64,000 nucleotides of DNA from Chrysemys picta bellii (lineage: Eukaryota), in NCBI RefSeq assembly GCF_011386835.1, contig NC_088802.1, forward strand, positions 9,672,001 through 9,736,000, read 5' to 3'. Below the pieces are notes generated by a model that did not search any database, was not told where the DNA came from, and worked only from the letters and a program-made list of their open reading frames with translations. This document shows, one piece after another, positions 9,302-62,585 of this stretch (its first letter is position 1; every line of letters begins with the position of its first letter). The position numbers were made by a program, and so were the translations under genes.

Positions 9302-9344
9302 TCCGCTCTTTTGATGAACGCTGGGGGTGGTTCTGAAAAGAACC
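9302..9344 (-). terminator. Histone 3' stem-loop plus HDE (U7 site) of H1-like gene A
   Basis: Minus strand GGTTCTTTTCAGAACC-ACCC at 9344-9329, with purine-rich AAAAGAGC about 17 nt downstream. Confidence 0.9.
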
Positions 9345-9379
9345 GTTTTGGTTTTGTTTTTCGCTCCTGGCCTGAGCCG

Positions 9380-9916
9380 TCACTCCAGAAGGAAGGTGCC
9401 CTTAATAATATCTTCTAAGATTTGCTTCCTGCGCGTTGCCACCGTCCCCCTGATTTTGCCCGGGCTCCCGCTGACCCTCTTGGGCCGTGCAGCAGCCGGT
9501 TTGATTTCCCCGCTGGGGTCATTTGGCCCTGGGGCAGCTGTTCCTGTCTTCGCCGAGCTCTGGCGCCTCTTGGCCGCGGCTGTTTCCCTCGTTTTTGCTT
9601 TGGCGGCGCCGCCTCCCCGCTGGAGCCTGAAAGAGCCCGAGGCGCCGCTGCCGCTGACCCGACGCAGGGCCCCTTGGCTCAGGAGATAACGGAGCACAGC
9701 CTTGATGCGGCCCTTGTTCTTCCGCACGTCGTATCCCTCGCCCTCCAGCGTCTTCTTGATGGCGGCAAGAGAGACGCCTCTGCCGGCAGCGGGGACAGCA
9801 GCAGCCCGGAGAATGACCTGGCTGAGAGTCGGTTTCCTCCTTCTCTTGCGCCGGGGATTCTCCCGAGCCGCGCGGGAGGCCGCAAAAGCCGCGGGGAGAG
9901 AAACTGAACCGGGCAT
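9380..9916 (-). CDS. Divergent, arginine-rich linker histone H1-like protein A (178 aa)
   Basis: Winged-helix motif VSLAAIKKTLEGEGYDVRKNKGRIK...SGSGASGSFRL, intronless, with stem-loop and HDE. ATG 9916 was chosen because the ORF-track ATG at 10099 lies upstream of the H1 promoter elements. Confidence 0.9.
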   Translation of the reverse strand: MPGSVSLPAAFAASRAARENPRRKRRRKPTLSQVILRAAAVPAAGRGVSLAAIKKTLEGEGYDVRKNKGRIKAVLRYLLSQGALRRVSGSGASGSFRLQRGGGAAKAKTRETAAAKRRQSSAKTGTAAPGPNDPSGEIKPAAARPKRVSGSPGKIRGTVATRRKQILEDIIKGTFLLE

Positions 9917-10007
9917 GTCCCTGCGACCCAATCCCAGCTGCTGCCACCCAGACCCGCACGTGGGGCCGCCGCCCTGACACTGAGCCCGGCGGCCGCCACT
10001 CGAGGCC

Positions 10008-10087
10008 AGATAGAGAGCAGAGCCCGACGCAACCGAATCAATCCCCCGCTTTACTCCTGCTCCAGCGCCTCCCCCCAGCCTGTGTTT
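10008..10087 (-). promoter_or_regulatory. H1-type proximal promoter of gene A
   Basis: AC box AAACACA (10087-10081), motif TTGATTCGGTTGCGTC (10041-10026), and the TATA position degenerate (ctgctcTCTATCT vs ctgctcTATATAA in gene E). Confidence 0.75.
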
Positions 10088-52949: not shown

Positions 52950-53006
52950 AGCTTTGCGTCCTATACCTGTGCTAAGGTGAAACCATCCACCGAATTAAGA
53001 CCCAAA

Positions 53007-53047
53007 GGCCCTTTTAAGGGCCACCCACTTTTCCCATAAAAGAGCTG
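53007..53047 (+). terminator. Histone stem-loop plus HDE of H2B
   Basis: GGCCCTTTTAAGGGCC-ACCCA at 53007-53022 and AAAAGAGCTG at 53038-53047. Confidence 0.92.
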
Positions 53048-54689
53048 CTCATAGTAAGGGAATTTAGTCTAATCAGATTAGTTACGGATTGAGATGTCAT
53101 CAGTTAAAATGTTCATCATTCCTGATTCTATAAAATTGATAAAAGCAATATTGGTAAAAGAAAACCGGTAAAAAGGTTGGTAGTTTTTTAACATATCCAC
53201 ATAAACAAGAATTATTTGTGGAAGTTCGATTGGGCTTATAAAATGCGGTTTACGTGCTATACATTCTTTGCATAGCAGATACTCTAATCCCTTAATAACC
53301 TTGCTTTTTATATTGAAATACGGGTATCAAACGCAGCTAGAGAATTTTTTTTGTAGAAACTTTAACTTGTATTGATGAATATTGCAAACTGTTGAAGCGT
53401 TTTCATTCGCAAAGGACTTGGATACCAAGGAGTCTTCATTTCCCGAAGACTGGAAAAACAGCCGCCCCAAAGCTATAACGAAGCGGAAACACCACAATCC
53501 GAACAGAAAGGGGATGTGGAAGGAACAAGGTATAAACTAAAAAACTTTTTATCTTCCCCAAAATAAACCTGAAGCCACCCGGCTGTTTCTCTCTTTACCA
53601 CTTCCCAGCAATATATTAACAAAATCCGCTGATAAAATTTCAGTCTGAAATGGTGGTTTTCCTCACACAATTGCAGCTTGCTGTCACTGTCCCTTTCAGG
53701 CAGCAAACCAGGCACTGTCTTCTGCGAAGCTGTCGCAGGAGCCTGGGCATGGCCGTGGAGTGATGCTAACTAAGCAGCAACCTACTTGTAAATCTACATT
53801 GCAGGTGCAGCCAGCTCGGAAATACACCAGGAGCCGTGGGGCAAGATCCACTCGCTGCCTTTCCAGCTGAGGGAAAACCAACCGCGCTCAGAAATATACG
53901 GAGCGGGTGGCGGCTCCTGCTGCTCGAGATCACTGGTTTATCAGGTCGGGGCGGCAGCAGGCGTGTGATGTTTATCTGAGGGGGGAGCAGGTCCTTTGTG
54001 TTGTGAAAGTCTCTTTAGAAATCGAATTCCTCCTAAGTCTTCAACTGGAGTTTTTATAAGACGGGGCCACCTACCTATCTACCGTCCCTGCTCCCCCCGC
54101 ATGTACATATTCCAATCTGCCCTTGAAAACGCAGGAATCTTGGCCCTCCACCCCAGCCAGCCCTGGCTTCAGGCCGGAGTGCAGCTGAGGCAGAAACAGG
54201 ACAGTGCTGTCCCGTCCTTGAACCCCTCCCCAACCACGGGTAGTCACGAAAACCTTTCGAGCATCCTACCATGACTGCATTATGGGCAATACGAGAATGC
54301 ATATAATCCGTGGGGATTTAGGTTGTTTCCAGATTACTTGTACGTTTCCTCCACCTGTCACATCACATTCTGAGATAAGGTTGGGAATAATTCTGGGGTT
54401 TACAATGTTCATAGTTCGATACACACAACTCCTATAGCTTCTGGTCACTTGGTCGCCATATCTGATTTTTCACACTCGTTCCCGTCAGGCAGTGACAGAG
54501 GCTCGTCATATTTAATAATATAGTAAACCAGCCCGCATATCTCGCCTCTTTCTAAAGGGGAGGGGGAAGACCTAAAAAGCCTGTTTCTGATTTCCCCAGC
54601 GCACCTACTGTTTTCCGCTGAAATCAAAGGGAGATTTGCCAGAGCTAGGGATGCAGTGTAAGGGAGACATCAGGGCATTCGTGCTTAAA

Positions 54690-54729
54690 GCTCTCCTGGA
54701 CATGGTTTGGGGTGGCTCTTAAAAGAGCC
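54690..54729 (-). terminator. Histone stem-loop plus HDE of H1-like gene C
   Basis: Minus strand GGCTCTTTTAAGAGCC-ACCCC at 54729-54714, with AGGAGAGCT downstream. Confidence 0.9.
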
Positions 54730-54763
54730 GTTGTTGTTTCGTTGCGGTGAATCCATAGGTCTG

Positions 54764-55345
54764 TTAAGATTTCCGCTGGGGAGCCATTGCCCCGCGAGCA
54801 GAGGAAGCCGCAGAAGTCTTGCCAGCTCCTTTGCCTTCGGCCATGTTCCGTATCTTCCCGGGGGGCTTTGTCCCCGTCCCTTTGTTTTTCTTCTCGATCT
54901 TTTTAGCCTCCTTGTTGGCAAGCGGCTTTTTATCTGCCTGTCTCTTCTGCTTTGCCGGCTTCTTGGCCTCCTTGGTCTTGGGCAGCTGCAGAACAAGCTG
55001 AGTTTTGCCGACCCCAGGCTCTTTGCAGAGCTTGTAGGAGCCGGGAGCCCCAGTCACTCCAGGCACCTTGCACAGGATGTTGTTGGTGACCAGCTTCTTG
55101 AGCGCCGCTTTGATGCGGCTTTTGTTCCTCTGGACGTCGACTCCCGTCGCCGCCAGCTCCTTCTCGATGGCCACCAGGGAGAAGCCCTTGCGGCTCTTGG
55201 AGAAATCCACGCTCCACAGGATGAGCTGGGCAAAAGCCGGCCGCTGTCTTCGAGGCGGCTTCTTCTTCCTTCTCTTCTTTTTCCTTTGGCTGGCTGGAGC
55301 TGGAGCTGCGACTGGAGCTTCAGCTGCCGTTTGCGCTGTATTCAT
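54764..55345 (-). CDS. Divergent H1-like protein C (193 aa)
   Basis: Globular domain FSLVAIEKELAATGVDVQRNKSRIKAALKKLV...GAPGSYKL with a Lys-rich tail. Intronless, with stem-loop/HDE and a good start context (gagATGa). Confidence 0.9.
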   Translation of the reverse strand: MNTAQTAAEAPVAAPAPASQRKKKRRKKKPPRRQRPAFAQLILWSVDFSKSRKGFSLVAIEKELAATGVDVQRNKSRIKAALKKLVTNNILCKVPGVTGAPGSYKLCKEPGVGKTQLVLQLPKTKEAKKPAKQKRQADKKPLANKEAKKIEKKNKGTGTKPPGKIRNMAEGKGAGKTSAASSARGAMAPQRKS

Positions 55346-55477
55346 CTCGGCCTAAAGGGGGCGCCGCTTCTGCAGCCACCAGCACTGCTCCAGGCGCCTG
55401 CGGCGCAGTCTGTCCCCCAGTCGCTGCTCTCGCCGCTCACGCCGCCGACTGGAAGCCAGGGCTGCTGCCCGCGGCTA

Positions 55478-55565
55478 ATTATAGCCGGGACCCCGACGCA
55501 ACCGAATCAACCTCCCGCCCCTCCTGCTGCCGCAGCTCTAGGCTCCTCTCCTCCAAAGTGTGTCT
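55478..55565 (-). promoter_or_regulatory. H1-type promoter of gene C
   Basis: TATAAT (55483-55478), TTGATTCGGTTGCGTC (55510-55495), GGGCGG GC box, and AC-box variant AGACACA (55565-55559). Confidence 0.75.
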
Positions 55566-56319
55566 CTCCGGCACCGAGAACCTGAGTTTCTAAGAGCACA
55601 CGAGGCCTCCTGTCATTCCACAACAGCCATCTTGTCCAGATCGGGAGGGTGTTTCATTCCCTGGCGTTGGTGTTAAGGAATGAACCTCCTGCTGAGGGGT
55701 GTGGGGGGAGAGAGAAAGTGAAAATAAAACCACCAAAGCCTCGCACACATCTCCAGCTCTTCACTCAGACTGGAGCAGTATTTGATATTTTTCTCTTAAC
55801 GAATGTTAAAATTCTCAGCCTTACCTCTGACAGAAAAAGGAACAGGGATGAATGAACAAATCAACCTATGAAGGAATTCAATAGATGATTTTGTGGAGTG
55901 GGGAGGAATTGTTTTTAAATAGAGCAGGTGAATTTATCAGTCAAGATCATCAGGGATCCATCCCATCCCAGCTGCTGGGACTGGAAGACGGGATAGATCA
56001 CTAGGTAATTGCCTTGTTCTGTCCATTCCTTCTGAAGCATCTGGCATTGGCCACTTCAGAAGACAGGATATTGGGCTAGATGGACCCAGTATGACCATTT
56101 GTGCTGATGGTAGAGCATGACAGTTTTAGGAAGAAAAAAAGAGAGAAAGAAAAGGGGCTTTCTCACTGGTTCATTTAGGATCCTCATTCTCATTGGCTCA
56201 GGGGACCTGGACTCCTACTAGCCAATCAGAATGGAGGAACTGCTCAGCTCTAAGGTTATAACAAAAGTCGCTCAACCATTCTGTTTTGTTGAGAGAAGAA
56301 AGGTGTTCTGTTAATAGAG

Positions 56320-56641: not shown

Positions 56642-57507
56642 CACTGAATGTAGTATCAAGAACTAAGGCTGTGTCTGTTTTTGCCTTCCTATCCCCTTTA
56701 TAGGAACAGGCATAGCAAATTCTCCCTGACACAGATAGGAAGAAACTTCTGATAATACATTAGCCCTACTCTTCATTCTAGCTAGCTATTGTTAGCTACG
56801 GGGATTTCCTTTAAATTTTACCCACATTTGGTTTCCTTCATTGATCTATATGATCTTCATGATAGAAAACACTGCAAAGGGAGCACTGATTGCAGGTAAT
56901 GCATATTCCACCGGTTTACAATGCATATAATTCCATAGTGTGTGCATACAACAAAATAAGAATTTGTCTCAGTATGTGGCCAGCTAAGAAGTATACAGCT
57001 CCACTGGGTATCTATGTATATGGGATATGTTCATTTGCACATTTCTGAAAATTTGTTCCTTAAATGAGAAAAGTTCAGATACATAAACGGGAGATTTTCA
57101 TGGCCGTTAAACTCAGAGTTGGGAGTCTTCATTAGAATTAGGCTATTCCAGTTAGGCCTAATTGTTATTTGTGACTTTGAAGCTCTTTCTTTAAAAGTCT
57201 ACAAGGACAAAAGGATGCAGAGTTACAGGAGAATTAAGAGCACAGTCATGAAGGATCTCACTGCTGCAGGGCTTTGTGTAATTTTTTTGGCAGGTGAATG
57301 TATTGCTTAATGTTTGTAATCCTCAGCCAAACACATTTGTCATGTAGTTACATAGCCCAGTTTTGTGACCTATCCCAGACAGCAACTCATAAATATTTCG
57401 GACAACGCCAGCGGGGGAACTAGCTCAGTGCCCTGGAGCGGGGAGGGCGAAAGGATTGTGCAAATCGGGGCTGGTGCTTTTGGGGGGCAACATGAGTGGG
57501 ACGGAAG

Positions 57508-57590
57508 AAACACAGGCTGGGGGGAGGCGCAGGGGCAGGAGTAAAGCGGGGGATTGATTCGGTTGCGTCGGGCTCTGCTCTCTATCTGGC
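57508..57590 (+). promoter_or_regulatory. H1-type promoter of gene B
   Basis: AAACACA at 57508-57514, TTGATTCGGTTGCGTC at 57554-57569, and a degenerate TATA position as in gene A. Confidence 0.75.
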
Positions 57591-57678: not shown

Positions 57679-58215
57679 ATGCCCGGTTCGCTTCGTCTCC
57701 CCGCGGCTTTTGCGGCCTCCCGCGCGGCTCGGGAGAATCCCCGGCGCAAGAGAAGGAGGAAACCGACTCTCAGCCAGGTCATTCTCCGGGCTGCTGCTGT
57801 CCCCGCCGCCGGCAGAGGCGTCTCTCTTGCCGCCATCAAGAAGACGCTGGAGGGCGAGGGATACGACGTGCGGAAGAACAAGGGCCGCATCAAGGCTGTG
57901 CTCCGTTATCTCCTGAGCCAAGGGGCCCTGCGTCGGGTCAGCGGCAGCGGCGCCTCGGGCTCTTTCAGGCTCCAGCGGGGAGGCGGCGCCGCCAAAGCAG
58001 AAACGAGGGAAACAGCCGCGGCCAAGAGGCGCCAGAGCTCGGCGAAGACAGGAACAGCTGCCCCAGGGCCAAATGACCCCAGCGGGGAAATCAAACCGGC
58101 TGCTGCACGGCCCAAGAGGGTCAGCAGGAGCCCGGGCAAAATCAGGGGGACGGTGGCAACGCGCAGGAAGCAAATCTTAGAAGATATTATTAAGGGCACC
58201 TTCCTTCTGGAGTGA
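57679..58215 (+). CDS. Arginine-rich H1-like protein B (178 aa), near-identical inverted copy of gene A
   Basis: Differs from gene A at 4 residues (VS/LR near the start, K/E, G/R), or 7 nt differences in 537 by hand count. Stem-loop and HDE are present. Confidence 0.9.
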   Translation: MPGSLRLPAAFAASRAARENPRRKRRRKPTLSQVILRAAAVPAAGRGVSLAAIKKTLEGEGYDVRKNKGRIKAVLRYLLSQGALRRVSGSGASGSFRLQRGGGAAKAETRETAAAKRRQSSAKTGTAAPGPNDPSGEIKPAAARPKRVSRSPGKIRGTVATRRKQILEDIIKGTFLLE

Positions 58216-58250
58216 CGGCTCAGGCCAGGAGCGAAAAACAAAACCAAAAC

Positions 58251-58290
58251 GGTTCTTTTCAGAACCACCCCCAGCGTTCATCAAAAGAGC
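58251..58290 (+). terminator. Histone stem-loop plus HDE of gene B
   Basis: GGTTCTTTTCAGAACC-ACCCC at 58251-58266 and AAAAGAGC at 58283-58290. Confidence 0.9.
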
Positions 58291-58695
58291 GAATGTCTTT
58301 GCTCCTTGGTGCTATATTTTGTAACGCGGCTTTTTTTAGAGATTAGGGAGGGTTGTGTGTGTTGTATGTATTCCTAGAATAGAAAGCAAACGGCAGCACT
58401 ACCATTGATGAATGCATTTTATGATAGGCAGGTCAGGGAAAACCAACAACACCAGGACAAGGCAGGGAACCTTCAAGATTAGTTAGATCCTGCCATTGAA
58501 TTAACTGACTTAAAATAAAGGGGGGTTGACCTTATTTTGTTGTTTTTTTGATTTGGTAAAGAAGGCAACTGACCCACGTTTATATGGTTTTCACCTTCCC
58601 TAACGCCTAGGATCTGGTCCTAGACAAATACAGAAAAAATGTTTTTTTAAAGGTATATTTGTGCTAACGTTCTTTTAGGGAAAGTTTTTGGGGGT

Positions 58696-58711
58696 GGCTC
58701 TTAAAAGAGCC
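58696..58711 (-). terminator. Histone stem-loop of pseudo-H1 D
   Basis: Minus strand GGCTCTTTTAAGAGCC-ACCCC. Confidence 0.85.
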
Positions 58712-58762
58712 TTTGGATTGATTGATTTTTTTCGGTAGAATGAGTCAGTAGAATTATGCCTT

Positions 58763-59258
58763 TTAGGGCTTCCCCTCGAGAGATGTTTCCCACTGCATAA
58801 AGGATACAGAAGCGACAGTTTCTCCAGTTCCCTCTTCCTGATCCACAAGAGCCTCTGCTTTCTTCTTGGCTTTTTTCTTCGCTGCTTTTTTGTTCCTCTT
58901 GCCCCCTGCTTCTTTGGCGATTTGTCCTTCTTCACCAGCGGAGGGGTTAGCTTCGCTTCTGCGATGAGCTTGTAGGAGCCCGGGACCTTAAGCAAGACAT
59001 TCGTGGTGACCAGCTTCCCAAGCTCCGCTTTGATACGGGCTTTGTTCTTCTTAACATCGATCCCCGCCGCCGCCAGCTCTTTCCTGATGACGCCCAGGGA
59101 GACCTCCCCGGAGTGCTGGGAGAAATCCACGGTCTGGAGAATGAAATGGGCAAAACCTTCGCGGTCTTTTCGAGTTATCGGTACCGCCTTCCTCTTCTTC
59201 CGCTTCGTTCTCTTGCTGGCTGGCGCCTGGGAAGGGGCAGCGGCTGATCTGTGTTCAT
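58763..59258 (-). pseudogene. Frameshifted H1-like gene D (same subfamily as C)
   Basis: ATG AAC ACA (MNT, as in gene C) at 59258 is out of frame with the globular domain (VSLGVIRKELAAAGIDVKKNKARIK). A second shift near 58.9 kb is needed to reach KRNKKAAKKKAKKK...ASVSFMQWETSLEGKP*. There is no in-frame ATG before the upstream TAG at 59310. Confidence 0.8.
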
Positions 59259-59982
59259 CTGGGTAGATACAAGAGGCGCCGCGTTTTCTATTTTTGATAG
59301 TTGTTCTCTACTTGCTACGGCGCCGCCTGCACCTCACGCTGCAGCAGATTGAAAGCCGGGCACTGCTGCTGCAGCCCGAGGGGTAGTTATACCCCAGTGT
59401 CTGACGCAACCGAATCAACCTGGTTCTATCCCCGCCTCTCTCTGGTCCTCTAGCACTAATAACCCGTGTTATGTTCGCCTGGTGACGCTGTTTCGTTCAC
59501 TCAATCTCTGTCAGGGAAAATATACAAAAATCTCGAATCTGCTCCCCGGCTAAGGAAGCCAATAAACAAAAATCGTGATTTTTCTCCAAATTATTGTTAA
59601 AATTCCATCATTTTCTCAGGATAGTCTAGGAGAAGAGAAGGGTTTACACACTATGGCATTTTAAATCCATGACAGATACTTTGGAGGCGGGGAAACATTG
59701 GTTCTATTTTTGCTTGGTTTCCCGGATGAGCTAATGAAAAGGAGAAATGTTTGGATCCTTAATTACATATCAAGAAGGCGAGGCTGATGGGTAGATACAG
59801 AAGTGAAGGGTGAGACCTGTACTAGCGAAAGGTTAGGTGGTAGGCGGTCTCAGTGTCCCTTCAGGTCTGCCACTATTTAATACATGGGAACTCCGCGATC
59901 CTACGTTTCGTTTTTTTTTTTTTTTTTTTGGGGGGGGGTTGTTTGTTTGTTTGTTTTTGTAGGGAAAAGAATAGGGAGAAAG

Positions 59983-60272: not shown

Positions 60273-60611
60273 GCGTGAGTGGGTTTGTCCTTTCTAGTCC
60301 CGTCCCCCCCGTCTCTTCCCTTTCCCTGTAATGCTAAGTGTCAATGATCTTGTTATTTATATAACTAGCCAATCCTAAAGTCTTTTCCTCAATAATTTTG
60401 AGTCCTGCTGGGTATTTATTCCGTTAAATCATTCTTGTCCGTTTTAAAGTTATTCCATTTCGATGATATGGTTATGTTGGATGACACCTTGGTCCTGTAA
60501 TGTGAGACAGCAAATGTAGCACCTGAATTATCAACTTCAATCAAACCATTACTTTCCACCCCAATAGGCGTGTGCTGGGAACTCGACATTTGAGGCACCC
60601 ATAGCCTCTAG

Positions 60612-60836
60612 GTTTCAGAGTAACAGCCGTGTTAGTCTGTATCCGCAAAAAGAAGAACAGGAGTACTTGTGGCACCTTAGAGACTAACACATTTATTAGA
60701 GCATAAGCTTTCGTGGACTACAGCCCACTGAAGAAGTGGGCTGTAGTCCCATCCGAAGAAGTGGGCTGTAGCCCACGAAAGCTTATGCTCTAATAAATGT
60801 GTTAGTCTCTAAGGTGCCACAAGTACTCCTGTTCTT
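60612..60836. mobile_element. Penelope-like terminal remnant forming a long hairpin
   Basis: 77-bp inverted arms at 60653-60729 and 60760-60836 with one mismatch. The sequence resembles the 3' end of the GIY-YIG element. Confidence 0.75.
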
Positions 60837-61653
60837 CCCATAGCCTCTAGACACTTTTGCAGATTATAGGCTAATACCTTTAAACCAGACGCATAAAACA
60901 ATCGGGATCTAAATACAACGAAATAAAATAAAATGCCTCTATTGTAAAACCCAAAGTATGATATCAAAATTAGCTTCCCCTTTTACTAAAAACCTAAACC
61001 TTAAAACAATATAATTATTTTCCAAACACATGAAAATAATTATTCTTCCTCCCTGTTACATTTTTTTCTGCATGTGTATCCTATAGTTTTCTGCAACTTT
61101 TGCTCTTTCTACTGAAGTTAATGGATGTTTTGACATTAATTTCAGCCAGGTGAATGAGAGTAGGATGCATCCCTATATAAATTAAAACAGCAGTACGTTT
61201 AAAGTACATTGTAATGTTTTACTATGACAGAAAACTAGAGATATTTATTTCCTTTTGAAATTAGACAAAGCCTCATAGGCGAGTATGGGGAAGCCTAGGT
61301 GTGTTTCTTGTTTGTCTTTGGAAGGGCACTGCACAAAAAAACAAAGAAAGAAATCATTTAATTTCTTTGTGTGGGATACCTCACTCCGCCTTAATACTGT
61401 TCCCTCGATATCTTGAGGGCAGGCACAGAATTGAAATTGTAATTTAAGATTAAACCCAAATTTTGTTTACTTTTGGAGGACAGGCAGGTGGATAAATCGA
61501 GGGTTTTGTCGATTTCTGGCGCGGGGAGCTTATTCAGTGGATCAAAAAAATGCAGCGAATAAAACCACCTAACAGTCCTAGCCTGGGGACGTCTACGTTA
61601 ATTGATCAAAAAGCCAGTGGGGCTTTTAAAATTAGAGATCAGTGGAGTTTCAG

Positions 61654-61781
61654 AAACACAGATTTCTGAGACGCTAGGAGGCAAGGAGAGGCTGATTGAT
61701 TCTGTTGCGTCCGCCGTCGGGGGAGGCGGTGCGCGCGGCGACCTGGTTGAGTCGGTTGCGTCGGGTTCTGCTCTATATAAA
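61654..61781 (+). promoter_or_regulatory. H1-type promoter of gene E
   Basis: AAACACA at 61654-61660, two one-mismatch copies of the 16-mer (61696-61711 and 61747-61762), TATATAAA at 61774-61781, and a TG-box-like TGTGTTT at 61300. Confidence 0.8.
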
Positions 61782-61860
61782 GCCCGTTAGGCGACCTGCG
61801 CGATCAGTTTGGAGCGGAGAGTCGTGGAAGCTTCGTGGGAGCTTGTCGCTTTGCAGCTCA

Positions 61861-61938
61861 GAGGCGGCGGCGGCGGCGGGAGCAGCAGCAGCAGCAGCGG
61901 TTGCAGCGAGGCGGCGGCGGTTGCGGCGGCGGTGGCGG
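61861..61938 (+). repeat. GGC/GCA trinucleotide repeat tract in the presumed 5' UTR of gene E
   Basis: gaggcggcggcggcggcgggagcagcagcagcagcagcggttgcagcgaggcggcggcggttgcggcggcggtggcgg lies between the TATA box and the ATG. Confidence 0.8.
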
Positions 61939-61968
61939 TTCTTGTGGCTGTGAATACAGTGGGGAGAA

Positions 61969-62505
61969 ATGCGAAATTTAAGCTCCGCCTCCCAGGCTTC
62001 TCTCTCAGAAGGGGCTCTAGCTACTTTTCTACCTAAGAAGAAAGGGAGGCCGTCTCTTCCCGACCTCATTCTGCGGGCTGTTTGCGTCTCTACAGCCCGC
62101 AAGGGCGCCTCTCTGGCTGCCATCAAGAAGGCGCTCTTGGCCGAGGGGTACGACGTGCAGAAGAACAACGGTCGCCTGAAGGCGACGCTCAGCTCTCTCG
62201 TTAGCAAAGGGCTGCTGCAGCGGGTGACGGGCAGCGGCGTCTCGGGATCCTTCAGGGTCAACAAGCGCCAGAAGAAGGGGGGCGCCTTGAAAGCAACGAA
62301 GAAAAAAACCGCCGTCAAGAGACCCAAAACCCAGATAGCGGCCCGGAGGTCTCCGAAAAAAATTAACCTCACAGCAGCTAGGAAGGCAAAGGGGCCCGGC
62401 AGGGAAACCAAGTCAGCTGTTAAAAAACCCAAGGCCCACAAAAACCCGGCCAGACCCAAGGGGAGGGCTGCCCCCCGCGGCAAAGCTGGAGGCAAGAGGC
62501 ATTAA
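61969..62505 (+). CDS. Divergent H1-like protein E (178 aa)
   Basis: Globular domain GASLAAIKKALLAEGYDVQKNNGRLKATLSSLVSKGLLQRVTGSGVSGSFRV with a basic tail, full promoter and stem-loop/HDE. Confidence 0.92.
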   Translation: MRNLSSASQASLSEGALATFLPKKKGRPSLPDLILRAVCVSTARKGASLAAIKKALLAEGYDVQKNNGRLKATLSSLVSKGLLQRVTGSGVSGSFRVNKRQKKGGALKATKKKTAVKRPKTQIAARRSPKKINLTAARKAKGPGRETKSAVKKPKAHKNPARPKGRAAPRGKAGGKRH

Positions 62506-62543
62506 AAACACATTCCTCGTCAACTAATAAATATAAACTCAAA

Positions 62544-62585
62544 GGCTCTTTTAAGAGCCACCCTCAATATTCACTAAGTGAGCTG
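62544..62585 (+). terminator. Histone stem-loop plus HDE of gene E
   Basis: GGCTCTTTTAAGAGCC-ACCC at 62544-62559 and AAGTGAGCTG downstream. Confidence 0.9.

What the first reader, a model, noticed from the sequence alone, without database searches (positions are those of the whole stretch)
10026..10041. A 16-bp motif TTGATTCGGTTGCGTC replaces the CCAAT box in all five H1-like promoters
Perfect copies are at 10026-10041 (A), 57554-57569 (B), 55495-55510 (C) and 59403-59418 (D), and one-mismatch copies at 61747-61762 and 61696-61711 (E). They always lie between the AC box and the TATA position (the TATA-proximal copy about 10-15 nt upstream of it), although the C/D and A/B/E proteins are very divergent from each other. 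The motif looks like an inverted CCAAT box (TGATTGGTT) split by an inserted C. The opposite strand contains CAACCG (fits MYB-type YAACNG) and GACGCAA (CRE/CEBP-like half site). Exact retention of two CpGs implies selection and low germline methylation. The binding factor is unknown to me, and A-MYB is only a hypothesis.
Basis: partly seen in the sequence, partly recalled or inferred. Interest (0 to 1): 0.75.

Follow-up and report, generated by a model that had tools for sequence, protein, structure and literature searches.

The report
Conserved promoter box of H1 variants
An 18-letter DNA box lies exactly 11 letters upstream of the TATA box, where ordinary linker-histone genes carry a CCAAT box; it has stayed almost unchanged in a little-known family of H1-like histone genes of turtles, a crocodilian and birds, so it is very probably the docking site of a gene regulator that is still unidentified.

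Summary
The 16-mer occurs six times in the window, against 0.03 expected by chance. Every copy lies in the promoter of one of five H1-like genes, and the TATA-proximal copy always ends exactly 11 nt before the TATA position. It is not a leftover of recent duplication. Apart from the A/B duplicate, the paralogue flanks are no more alike than shuffled sequence, and the proteins are 33-46% identical over their best local alignments.

The same box, at the same spacing, is present in orthologues from four other turtles, Chinese alligator, ostrich, duck, owl and crane. A lizard carries a decayed version with the same geometry. In 19 intact genes, 13 of 18 positions never vary (TTGA-N-TCGG-Y-TGCGTC-S-G), which is better conservation than the TATA box. 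A dead copy in Carettochelys has let the box decay.

No CCAAT lies between the AC box and TATA. A canonical bird H1 gene and the neighbouring H3 variant have a true CCAAT in the same slot.

NF-Y is also disfavoured, because there is never a CCAAT pentamer. The binding factor remains unknown; an H4-box/HINFP-like site is the best named candidate. Tissue of expression was not established. This scan had not noted the motif on other DNA.

The parts
10026..10041 (-). Box, gene A (perfect 16-mer; the conserved S-G extension reaches 10024)
57554..57569 (+). Box, gene B (inverted duplicate of A; not an independent observation)
55495..55510 (-). Box, gene C (perfect)
59403..59418 (-). Box, gene D (perfect; the gene is frameshifted in this genome)
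61696..61711 (+). Box, gene E, distal copy (G8 to T), followed by the conserved CGCC
61747..61762 (+). Box, gene E, TATA-proximal copy (T5 to G)
10006..10014 (-). Degenerate TATA position of A (TCTATCTGG), 11 nt after the box; the same word occurs in Gopherus and Carettochelys and, with one change (GCTATCTGG), in Eretmochelys
57581..57589 (+). Degenerate TATA position of B, 11 nt after the box
55475..55483 (-). TATA box of C (TATAATTAG), 11 nt after the box
59383..59391 (-). TATA box of D (TATAACTAC), 11 nt after the box
61774..61782 (+). TATA box of E (TATATAAAG), 11 nt after the proximal box. A conserved GATCAG initiator-like word about 32 nt downstream (A at 61806) is the inferred start site
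   Evidence: the start site is inferred, not mapped
10081..10088 (-). AC (H1) box of A, GAAACACA
57507..57514 (+). AC box of B
55648..55655 (-). AC box of C, GAAACACC
59488..59494 (-). Imperfect AC box of D, GAAACAG
61653..61660 (+). AC box of E, GAAACACA
9383..9916 (-). H1-like gene A coding sequence (178 aa, arginine-rich)
57679..58212 (+). H1-like gene B coding sequence (98% identical to A)
54767..55345 (-). H1-like gene C coding sequence (193 aa)
58678..59257 (-). H1-like gene D. The frame that opens at the ATG (59257) stops after 27 codons, and the globular-domain frame is shifted. The Gopherus orthologue is intact (162 aa)
61969..62502 (+). H1-like gene E coding sequence (178 aa), with orthologues in turtles, alligator and birds
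9304..9349 (-). Histone 3' stem-loop of A (30.1 bits, just under Rfam's cut-off of 34)
58246..58291 (+). Histone 3' stem-loop of B (30.1 bits)
54688..54734 (-). Histone 3' stem-loop of C (31.9 bits)
58672..58716 (-). Histone 3' stem-loop of D (35.8 bits)
62539..62584 (+). Histone 3' stem-loop of E (35.5 bits)

Best explanation
The motif is the core of an 18-bp promoter element specific to one histone subtype. Its consensus is TTGA-N-TCGG-Y-TGCGTC-S-G, read in the direction of the gene. It belongs to a family of H1-like linker-histone genes that end in a histone stem-loop and lie beside TRIM genes in sauropsids.

Shown: the element occupies the slot that canonical H1 genes give to their CCAAT box. 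Its 3' end is held exactly 11 bp (about one helical turn) from the TATA position. It is under strong purifying selection in intact genes and decays in a dead one.

Inferred: a sequence-specific protein binds it and acts together with the TATA-bound machinery, so that the family is transcribed under a programme different from the CCAAT-dependent one of canonical H1. The turtle and alligator promoters keep the AC box that marks H1 genes. Because the element is long (13 invariant positions over 18 bp) and has an internal direct repeat (TTGAnTC / yTGCGTC, 9 bp apart), I think a multi-zinc-finger protein or two adjacent subunits most likely. The factor's identity, and the tissue or cell-cycle programme it confers, are not established.
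For: There are six sites in the window against 0.03 expected.

The spacing is a fixed 11 nt to TATA in all 21 TATA-proximal copies examined: window, Gopherus, Carettochelys, Emydura, Eretmochelys, alligator, ostrich, duck, owl and crane.

Across about 260 kb of window plus loci, every hit at up to 3 mismatches lies in an H1-like promoter.

Information content is 1.74-1.95 bits per position in the box, about 0.5 in the flanks and 1.2-1.4 in the TATA. In 19 intact genes, 13 of 18 positions are invariant.

The flanks of the window paralogues are 47-54% identical upstream and 48-59% downstream of the box, about shuffled level (means 48-54%), and the proteins are 33-46% identical over their best local alignments.

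Paralogue types A, C and E were assigned by ORF similarity and are already separate in Carettochelys. C and E are already separate in the pleurodire Emydura.

Natural control: the Carettochelys D relic, a promoter plus stem-loop whose coding sequence has been deleted, has the box decayed to 3 mismatches.

Slot equivalence: canonical bird H1.10 has CCAAT + 18 nt + TATA, the neighbouring H3 variant has CCAAT + 17 nt + TATA, and there is no CCAAT between AC box and TATA in any H1-like promoter.

Subtype-specific histone promoter elements are an established class: the H2B octamer with Oct-1 and the H4 element with HiNF-P (PMC5706932), and the H4 box of H1.0, whose promoter lacks the CCAAT (PMC6027317, PMC12240685).
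Against: There is no binding, footprint or reporter evidence. The transcription start was not mapped.

The run contigs only suggest transcription. In one run the coverage is limited to the gene bodies of A/B, D and E. In another run a contig spans a promoter, so that run may be DNA. The tissue is unknown.

The host genome could not be scanned as a whole, so specificity rests on 64 kb plus 12 loci.

In the one lizard examined the 3' half is not conserved, so the full element may date only to the ancestor of turtles and archosaurs.

The D copy in the window is perfect although its gene is frameshifted. That frameshift could be a young lesion or an assembly error.
Confidence: 0.8

Rival explanations
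1. The box is an H4-box-like element bound by HINFP (HiNF-P/MIZF), the zinc-finger factor of histone H4 genes. Precedent: the H1.0 promoter has an H4 box and lacks the CCAAT box. This rival names the factor within the best explanation; it does not contradict it.
For: The HINFP consensus is CGGACGTT, i.e. AACGTCCG on the other strand (PMC12095737, a secondary source). 16 of 29 sites read GCGTCCG. All nine distal copies except the alligator's are followed by CGC, and all bird copies, distal and proximal, read GCGTCCG. The H4 box is a feature of H1.0, whose promoter lacks the CCAAT (PMC6027317, PMC12240685). From memory only: in the human H4 site II, GGTCCG lies 9 nt from TATA, the same distance as GTCCG here.
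Against: Position 17 is G in 11 of 29 sites, which breaks the GTCCG core; these include most TATA-proximal turtle copies and both alligator copies. The equally conserved 5' half, TTGAnTC, has no counterpart in the HINFP consensus. The H4 site II sequence could not be verified with the tools.
Confidence: 0.22
2. The box is a MYB-family site (A-MYB/MYBL1), read as CAACCG on the opposite strand, that drives meiotic expression.
For: CAACCG fits YAACNG in the window copies. 23 of 29 sites keep the T that gives the AAC core.
Against: The AAC core becomes AGC in 6 of 29 sites. These include the only box of intact Carettochelys A and C genes and of Eretmochelys A, and both alligator copies. Position 10 is one of the least constrained positions, while 12 other positions that a 6-bp MYB site does not need are invariant.
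Confidence: 0.05
3. The box is a degenerate inverted CCAAT box that is still bound by NF-Y.
For: The slot is the same as that of the canonical CCAAT. Removing the C from TTGATTCGGTT gives a good inverted NF-Y site.
Against: No site in any species has an intact CCAAT or ATTGG. The ATT varies (T, C or G at position 5). By established knowledge, NF-Y needs all five bases.
Confidence: 0.03
4. The box is a composite bZIP site: an AP-1/Maf-like TGA(C/G)TC half next to a C/EBP-CRE-like TTGCGTC half.
For: TGAGTC and TGACTC occur in turtle E and in birds. TTGCGTCA, i.e. TGACGCAA on the other strand, occurs in the window D copy.
Against: The bases that complete each bZIP site are missing or variable. 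Position 8 is G, not A. Position 17 is C or G, not A, except in D. Position 5 is T in most sites.
Confidence: 0.07
5. The box has no function: the identity is carried over from duplication or kept by gene conversion among paralogues.
For: A and B are a recent duplicate or conversion pair, with 95-99% identical flanks.
Against: Apart from A/B, the flanks next to the box are no more alike than shuffled sequence. The box is kept in lineages that separated long ago and in species that have a single family member. It decays in a dead copy.
Confidence: 0.02

Closest known systems
H1 subtype-specific CCAAT element of canonical H1 genes (from memory: bound by H1TF2/HiNF-B, an NF-Y-type factor)
   Same: Same slot between the AC box and TATA, at the same distance: CCAAT + 18 nt + TATA in bird H1.10 against ATTCGG + 18 nt + TATA here. 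A GCG triplet lies at the same offset. It also marks one histone subtype.
   Different: There is no CCAAT pentamer in any copy. The sequence is different and longer, and is conserved over 18 bp. E-type genes carry it twice. The birds examined have lost the AC box.
H4 box of the H1.0 promoter and site II of histone H4 genes (bound by HINFP/HiNF-P, with HBP1 also binding in H1.0)
   Same: It is a precedent for an H1 variant gene that carries a different histone-type element and lacks the CCAAT box (PMC6027317, PMC12240685). Many copies contain the CGTCCG core of the HINFP consensus (PMC12095737).
   Different: The proteins are of the somatic H1.2-H1.4 type, not the H1.0/H5 type. The GTCCG core is broken in 11 of 29 sites. 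The 5' half has no counterpart in the H4 box.
TE element / X-box of the mammalian testis H1t promoter (bound by RFX2; from memory)
   Same: It is an extra, variant-specific element in an H1 promoter that otherwise keeps the AC box, TATA and a stem-loop 3' end.
   Different: From memory, H1t keeps its CCAAT box, and its TE element lies elsewhere in the promoter. The box here is not an X-box palindrome; it contains only a GTTGCG half-like word whose T is variable.
MYB / A-MYB binding site (YAACNG)
   Same: The opposite strand reads CAACCG in most copies.
   Different: The AAC core is not conserved, and the constraint extends far beyond 6 bp.

Membership tests
Histone subtype-specific promoter consensus elements (class) | Present in the promoters of all members of one histone subtype | tested here: met
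   Present in all 21 intact or near-intact family promoters examined, from 10 species.
Histone subtype-specific promoter consensus elements (class) | Fixed position relative to the TATA box | tested here: met
   Exactly 11 nt in every TATA-proximal copy.
Histone subtype-specific promoter consensus elements (class) | Absent from the promoters of other histone classes | tested here: met
   Absent from the H3-variant and H2B-variant promoters of the window and from a canonical bird H1.10/H2A locus. No H4 gene and no canonical turtle H1 gene was available.
Histone subtype-specific promoter consensus elements (class) | Bound by a dedicated factor and needed for transcription | not testable with these tools
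   Needs pull-down and reporter assays.
CCAAT box / NF-Y site | Intact CCAAT (ATTGG) pentamer | tested here: not met
   None in any of 30 sites. No CCAAT or ATTGG between AC box and TATA in 21 promoters.
MYB binding site | Conserved AAC core of YAACNG | tested here: not met
   The core is AGC in 6 of 29 sites, including the sole box of intact genes.
HINFP site / H4 box | GTCCG (CGGAC) core | tested here: inconclusive
   Present in 16 of 29 sites, replaced by GTCGG in 11 and by GTCAG in 2.
HINFP site / H4 box | Binding by HINFP | not testable with these tools
   No motif library or binding data were available.
RFX X-box | Inverted repeat GTNRCC N0-3 RGYAAC | tested here: not met
   Only one half-like word, GTTGCG, with no second arm; its T is variable. 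The consensus is from memory.
CRE / C/EBP composite site (TGACGCAA) | Full 8-mer, including the terminal T/A | tested here: not met
   Only the window D copy reads TGACGCAA. Position 17 is otherwise C or G.

The most novel reading that the evidence does not exclude
The 18-bp box is the recognition site of a dedicated, still unnamed sequence-specific factor, probably a multi-zinc-finger protein. That factor would give this TRIM-linked, stem-loop-type linker-histone family of sauropsids its own transcription channel. It would stand beside Oct-1 for H2B, HINFP for H4 and CRAMP1 (plus the CCAAT factor) for canonical H1, and would possibly be germline-specific.
Probability: 0.4. Interest if true: 0.7.

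Novelty: new variant of a known kind. Interest (0 to 1): 0.6.

Why it matters
Histone genes are a classic case in which each subtype has its own short promoter element and its own factor. Here an apparently undescribed subtype element marks an apparently undescribed H1 variant family shared by turtles, a crocodilian and birds.

The element is unusually well defined: 13 invariant positions, fixed phase to TATA, and a natural decay control. That makes finding the factor a direct experiment (an oligonucleotide pull-down). It also gives a search key for listing every gene of the same regulon in sauropsid genomes. Together these could show when and where these linker histones, and the variant H2B and H3 genes beside them, are used.

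Tried and rejected
1. Recent duplication or gene conversion as the cause: rejected. The flanks are at shuffled-level identity and the box is deeply conserved.

2. MYB, NF-Y, RFX and bZIP readings: each fails on the substitution pattern.

3. [quoted passage not shown] It remains a plausible reader of the retained AC box.

4. Tissue and start site from public runs: only Logan contigs were available, their kind (RNA or DNA) is a guess, and sample names are coded. Coverage limited to gene bodies in one run suggests transcription of A/B, D and E, but another run has a contig across a promoter.

5. Kinship with mammalian H1.9 (HILS1): a marsupial H1.9-like gene lies in a sarcoglycan intron. Its promoter has an AC box and CCAAT boxes and no box of this kind. 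The protein scores no better than canonical H1 in the profile search.

6. Literature: no paper in the held library describes this family or the motif. The H4 site II sequence could not be fetched.

7. No H4 gene lies in any held locus, so the H4 box of sauropsids could not be compared.

8. Earlier notes of this scan, searched by sequence and by words, gave nothing on the motif elsewhere.

9. No motif library (JASPAR with TOMTOM) is available offline, so factor candidates rest partly on recalled consensus sequences.

Full report
OBSERVATION. Shorter cores give the same sites and nothing else convincing. Each copy lies upstream of, and points the same way as, an ORF with a Pfam Linker_histone domain (A, C, E) or its relative. 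B is a 98% duplicate of A. D has the globular-domain ORF but is frameshifted.

Read in gene orientation, all five promoters have the same layout:
- an AC box (GAAACAC; the D copy, GAAACAG, is imperfect) 47-145 nt upstream of the proximal box;
- G-rich sequence;
- the box;
- exactly 11 nt of spacer;
- a TATA box (TATATAAAG in E, TATAATTAG in C, TATAACTAC in D) or, in A and B, a degenerate TCTATCTGG.
Gene E has a second copy 51 nt further upstream.

IS IT MORE THAN SHARED ANCESTRY OF RECENT COPIES? Yes. Apart from the A/B pair, the 200 nt upstream of the box are 47-54% identical between paralogues, against 48-50% for shuffled sequence. The 100 nt downstream are 48-59% identical, against 49-54%. 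The proteins share 33-46% identity over their best local alignments. The box is an island: among the four independent window paralogues, 15 of 16 positions are identical, while the flanks carry about 0.8 bits.

COMPARATIVE EVIDENCE. The word search with protein E found orthologues in all turtle lineages, in Chinese alligator and in many birds. C and A types were found essentially only in turtles. I fetched 13 loci.

The box is present, in the same orientation and with the same 11-nt distance to TATA, in these genes:
- Emydura (C and E);
- Gopherus (A, C, D, E);
- Carettochelys (A, C, E);
- Eretmochelys (A);
- alligator, ostrich, tufted duck, barn owl and whooping crane.

E-type genes carry two copies everywhere. 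Their distance apart is variable (32-62 nt), which argues that each copy is a separate site. Paralogue assignments were checked by ORF similarity. In about 260 kb of window plus loci, every hit with up to 3 mismatches lies in a promoter of this family.

Over 29 non-redundant sites the counts give T28 T29 G29 A29 N T28 C28 G24 G29 T23/C6 T29 G27 C29 G28 T29 C29 (C16/G11/A2) G29. In the TATA-proximal copies of 19 intact genes, 13 of 18 positions never vary. The element therefore extends two positions further (S-G).

By established divergence dates, turtles and archosaurs separated roughly 250 million years ago. The C and E types were already separate in the common ancestor of living turtles.

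A NATURAL CONTROL. In Carettochelys the D-type locus is a relic: promoter, about 130 nt, then the stem-loop, with the coding sequence gone. Its box has decayed to GTGACTCGGTTGCTTC, the only copy with 3 mismatches apart from the alligator's proximal copy and the duck's distal copy. The window's own D copy is frameshifted soon after the ATG relative to the intact Gopherus gene, yet it keeps a perfect box. This is either a young lesion or an assembly error.

DOES IT REPLACE THE CCAAT BOX? A canonical bird H1.10 gene fetched as comparator has the textbook layout: AC box, GC box, CCAAT, 18 nt, TATAAAAG. The divergent H3 gene in this same window has CCAAT, 17 nt, TATATAAGG. In the H1-like genes ATTCGG, 18 nt, TATA lies in the same place, with a GCG triplet at the same offset as in the canonical element. 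No CCAAT or ATTGG exists between AC box and TATA in any of 21 promoters.

Papers confirm that CCAAT and TATA are conserved features of H1 promoters and that H1.0 is the known exception. H1.0 lacks the CCAAT (PMC12240685) and carries an H4 box that is unique to the differentiation-dependent H1 genes (PMC6027317). Subtype-specific elements with dedicated factors are an established class (PMC5706932). The turtle and alligator promoters keep an AC box. The four bird promoters have none within 260 nt.

WHAT KIND OF GENES ARE THESE? Protein E is closest to somatic H1.2-H1.4 among solved structures and far from H1.0/H5. All five window genes end in a histone 3' stem-loop. D and E score above Rfam's cut-off; A, B and C score just below it. 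A strict pattern also finds the stem-loop 32-48 nt after the stop codon in the alligator, ostrich, duck, crane, Carettochelys and Emydura E genes and in the Eretmochelys A gene.

These are therefore stem-loop-type histone genes with a non-canonical promoter. They lie among TRIM/PRY-SPRY genes, together with variant H2B and H3 genes. In birds, GNT-I and C-type lectin genes are also nearby. In the lizard the neighbour is a WD40 gene.

A profile search of the 1.84-billion-protein library found 22 strong hits. All those checked are from birds, turtles or the alligator. Next came a lizard protein and then the general mass of H1 proteins.

The lizard locus has two H1-like genes whose promoters keep the geometry (16 nt + 11 nt + TATA) and the 5' half. 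They read TTGATTCTTTTATGCC and CTGATTCTATTGTGTC, so the CpG-containing 3' half has decayed or is different. A marsupial H1.9-like (HILS1) gene has an AC box and CCAAT boxes and no such box.

WHICH FACTOR?
- MYB: the T that gives the AAC core is C in 6 of 29 sites. These include the only box of intact Carettochelys A and C genes and of Eretmochelys A, and both alligator copies. This is the second most variable position inside the 16-mer, so MYB is disfavoured.
- NF-Y: there is never a CCAAT, and the ATT varies.
- bZIP and RFX readings each lack required bases.
- HINFP: its consensus is CGGACGTT (PMC12095737, secondary). That gives CGTCCG on the gene strand, which 16 of 29 sites contain, including all bird copies and the turtle distal copies, which continue with CGC. 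But 11 sites have GTCGG, and the equally constrained 5' half is unexplained. From memory only, the GTCCG-to-TATA distance equals that of the human H4 site II. I could not verify this.

I therefore rank an unidentified multi-domain factor first and HINFP as the best named candidate. CRAMP1 is reported to read the CH1UE and/or H1-box motifs (PMC12240685). It could act on the retained AC box, but nothing links it to this slot.

EXPRESSION. One search of public runs returned only Logan contigs whose kind is guessed. In run X3 the contigs cover only the gene bodies of A/B (57817-58249), D (58759-59213) and E (61943-62529), as transcripts would. In X1 one contig spans the B or A promoter, and in X12 a contig ends in the TATA of E, so DNA cannot be excluded. 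The tissue is unknown. The germline idea is untested.

LIMITS. There is no whole-genome scan of the host, no motif library and no binding data. Comparators are one canonical H1 gene (from a bird), one lizard and one mammal. Divergence dates and several consensus sequences are from general knowledge. 

Noticed in passing
window 9304-9349, 54688-54734, 58246-58291, 58672-58716, 62539-62584: All five H1-like genes end in a histone 3' stem-loop, as does the H2B variant at 53002-53047. No stem-loop was found downstream of the H3 variant, searched to 12600. The mRNAs of these six genes would lack poly-A and be missed by poly-A RNA-seq.
   Followed up: yes
window 58678-59257 (-); L008 5917-6740; L009 6540-7366: Gene D is frameshifted after about codon 6 in this genome, but is intact (162 aa) in Gopherus. 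In Carettochelys it is reduced to a promoter plus stem-loop relic. A run of another turtle shows a 42-nt deletion and small insertions in D.
   Followed up: partly
window 11499-11529: The very divergent H3 variant keeps an ordinary CCAAT + 17 nt + TATATAAGG promoter, unlike its H1-like neighbours. From memory, the chicken MHC-B map has an H3-like gene annotated 'CenpA' next to C4. It may be the counterpart of this variant and would be worth checking.
   Followed up: partly
L004, L005, L006, L010 (birds); L012 (lizard): The bird orthologues lie beside TRIM/PRY-SPRY, GNT-I and C-type lectin genes, a neighbourhood like the MHC-B TRIM region. The lizard gene lies beside a WD40 (RACK1-like) gene. 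No galliform orthologue appeared in the searches.
   Followed up: no
window 61855-61942; L004 9790-9990: The 5' leader of gene E is a GGC/GCA triplet repeat. The ostrich, duck and owl leaders are also long GC-rich repeats (GGCGGC, GGAGCG). The read tool skipped this stretch as repetitive.
   Followed up: no
window 60610-60836: This is a roughly 227-nt perfect-hairpin (inverted-repeat) element flanked by a direct duplication CCCATAGCCTCTAG. It reaches very high depth in all four runs laid (tens of thousands), so it is an abundant MITE-like repeat of turtles.
   Followed up: no
window 10006-10014 and 57581-57589; L008, L009, L011: A-type genes have replaced the TATA box by TCTATCTGG. Gopherus and Carettochelys carry the identical word and Eretmochelys a one-base variant (GCTATCTGG), always at the same 11-nt distance from the box.
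   Followed up: partly
L012 14018-15133 (-): The lizard's second family member encodes a 371-aa protein with a weak linker-histone domain and a long basic tail. Its promoter has both an inverted CCAAT (GTGATTGGCTG) and the decayed box.
   Followed up: no
L013 9870-9940: The marsupial H1.9-like (HILS1) gene, inside a sarcoglycan intron, keeps an H1-type AC box (AGAAACACAAG) and two CCAAT boxes.
   Followed up: no
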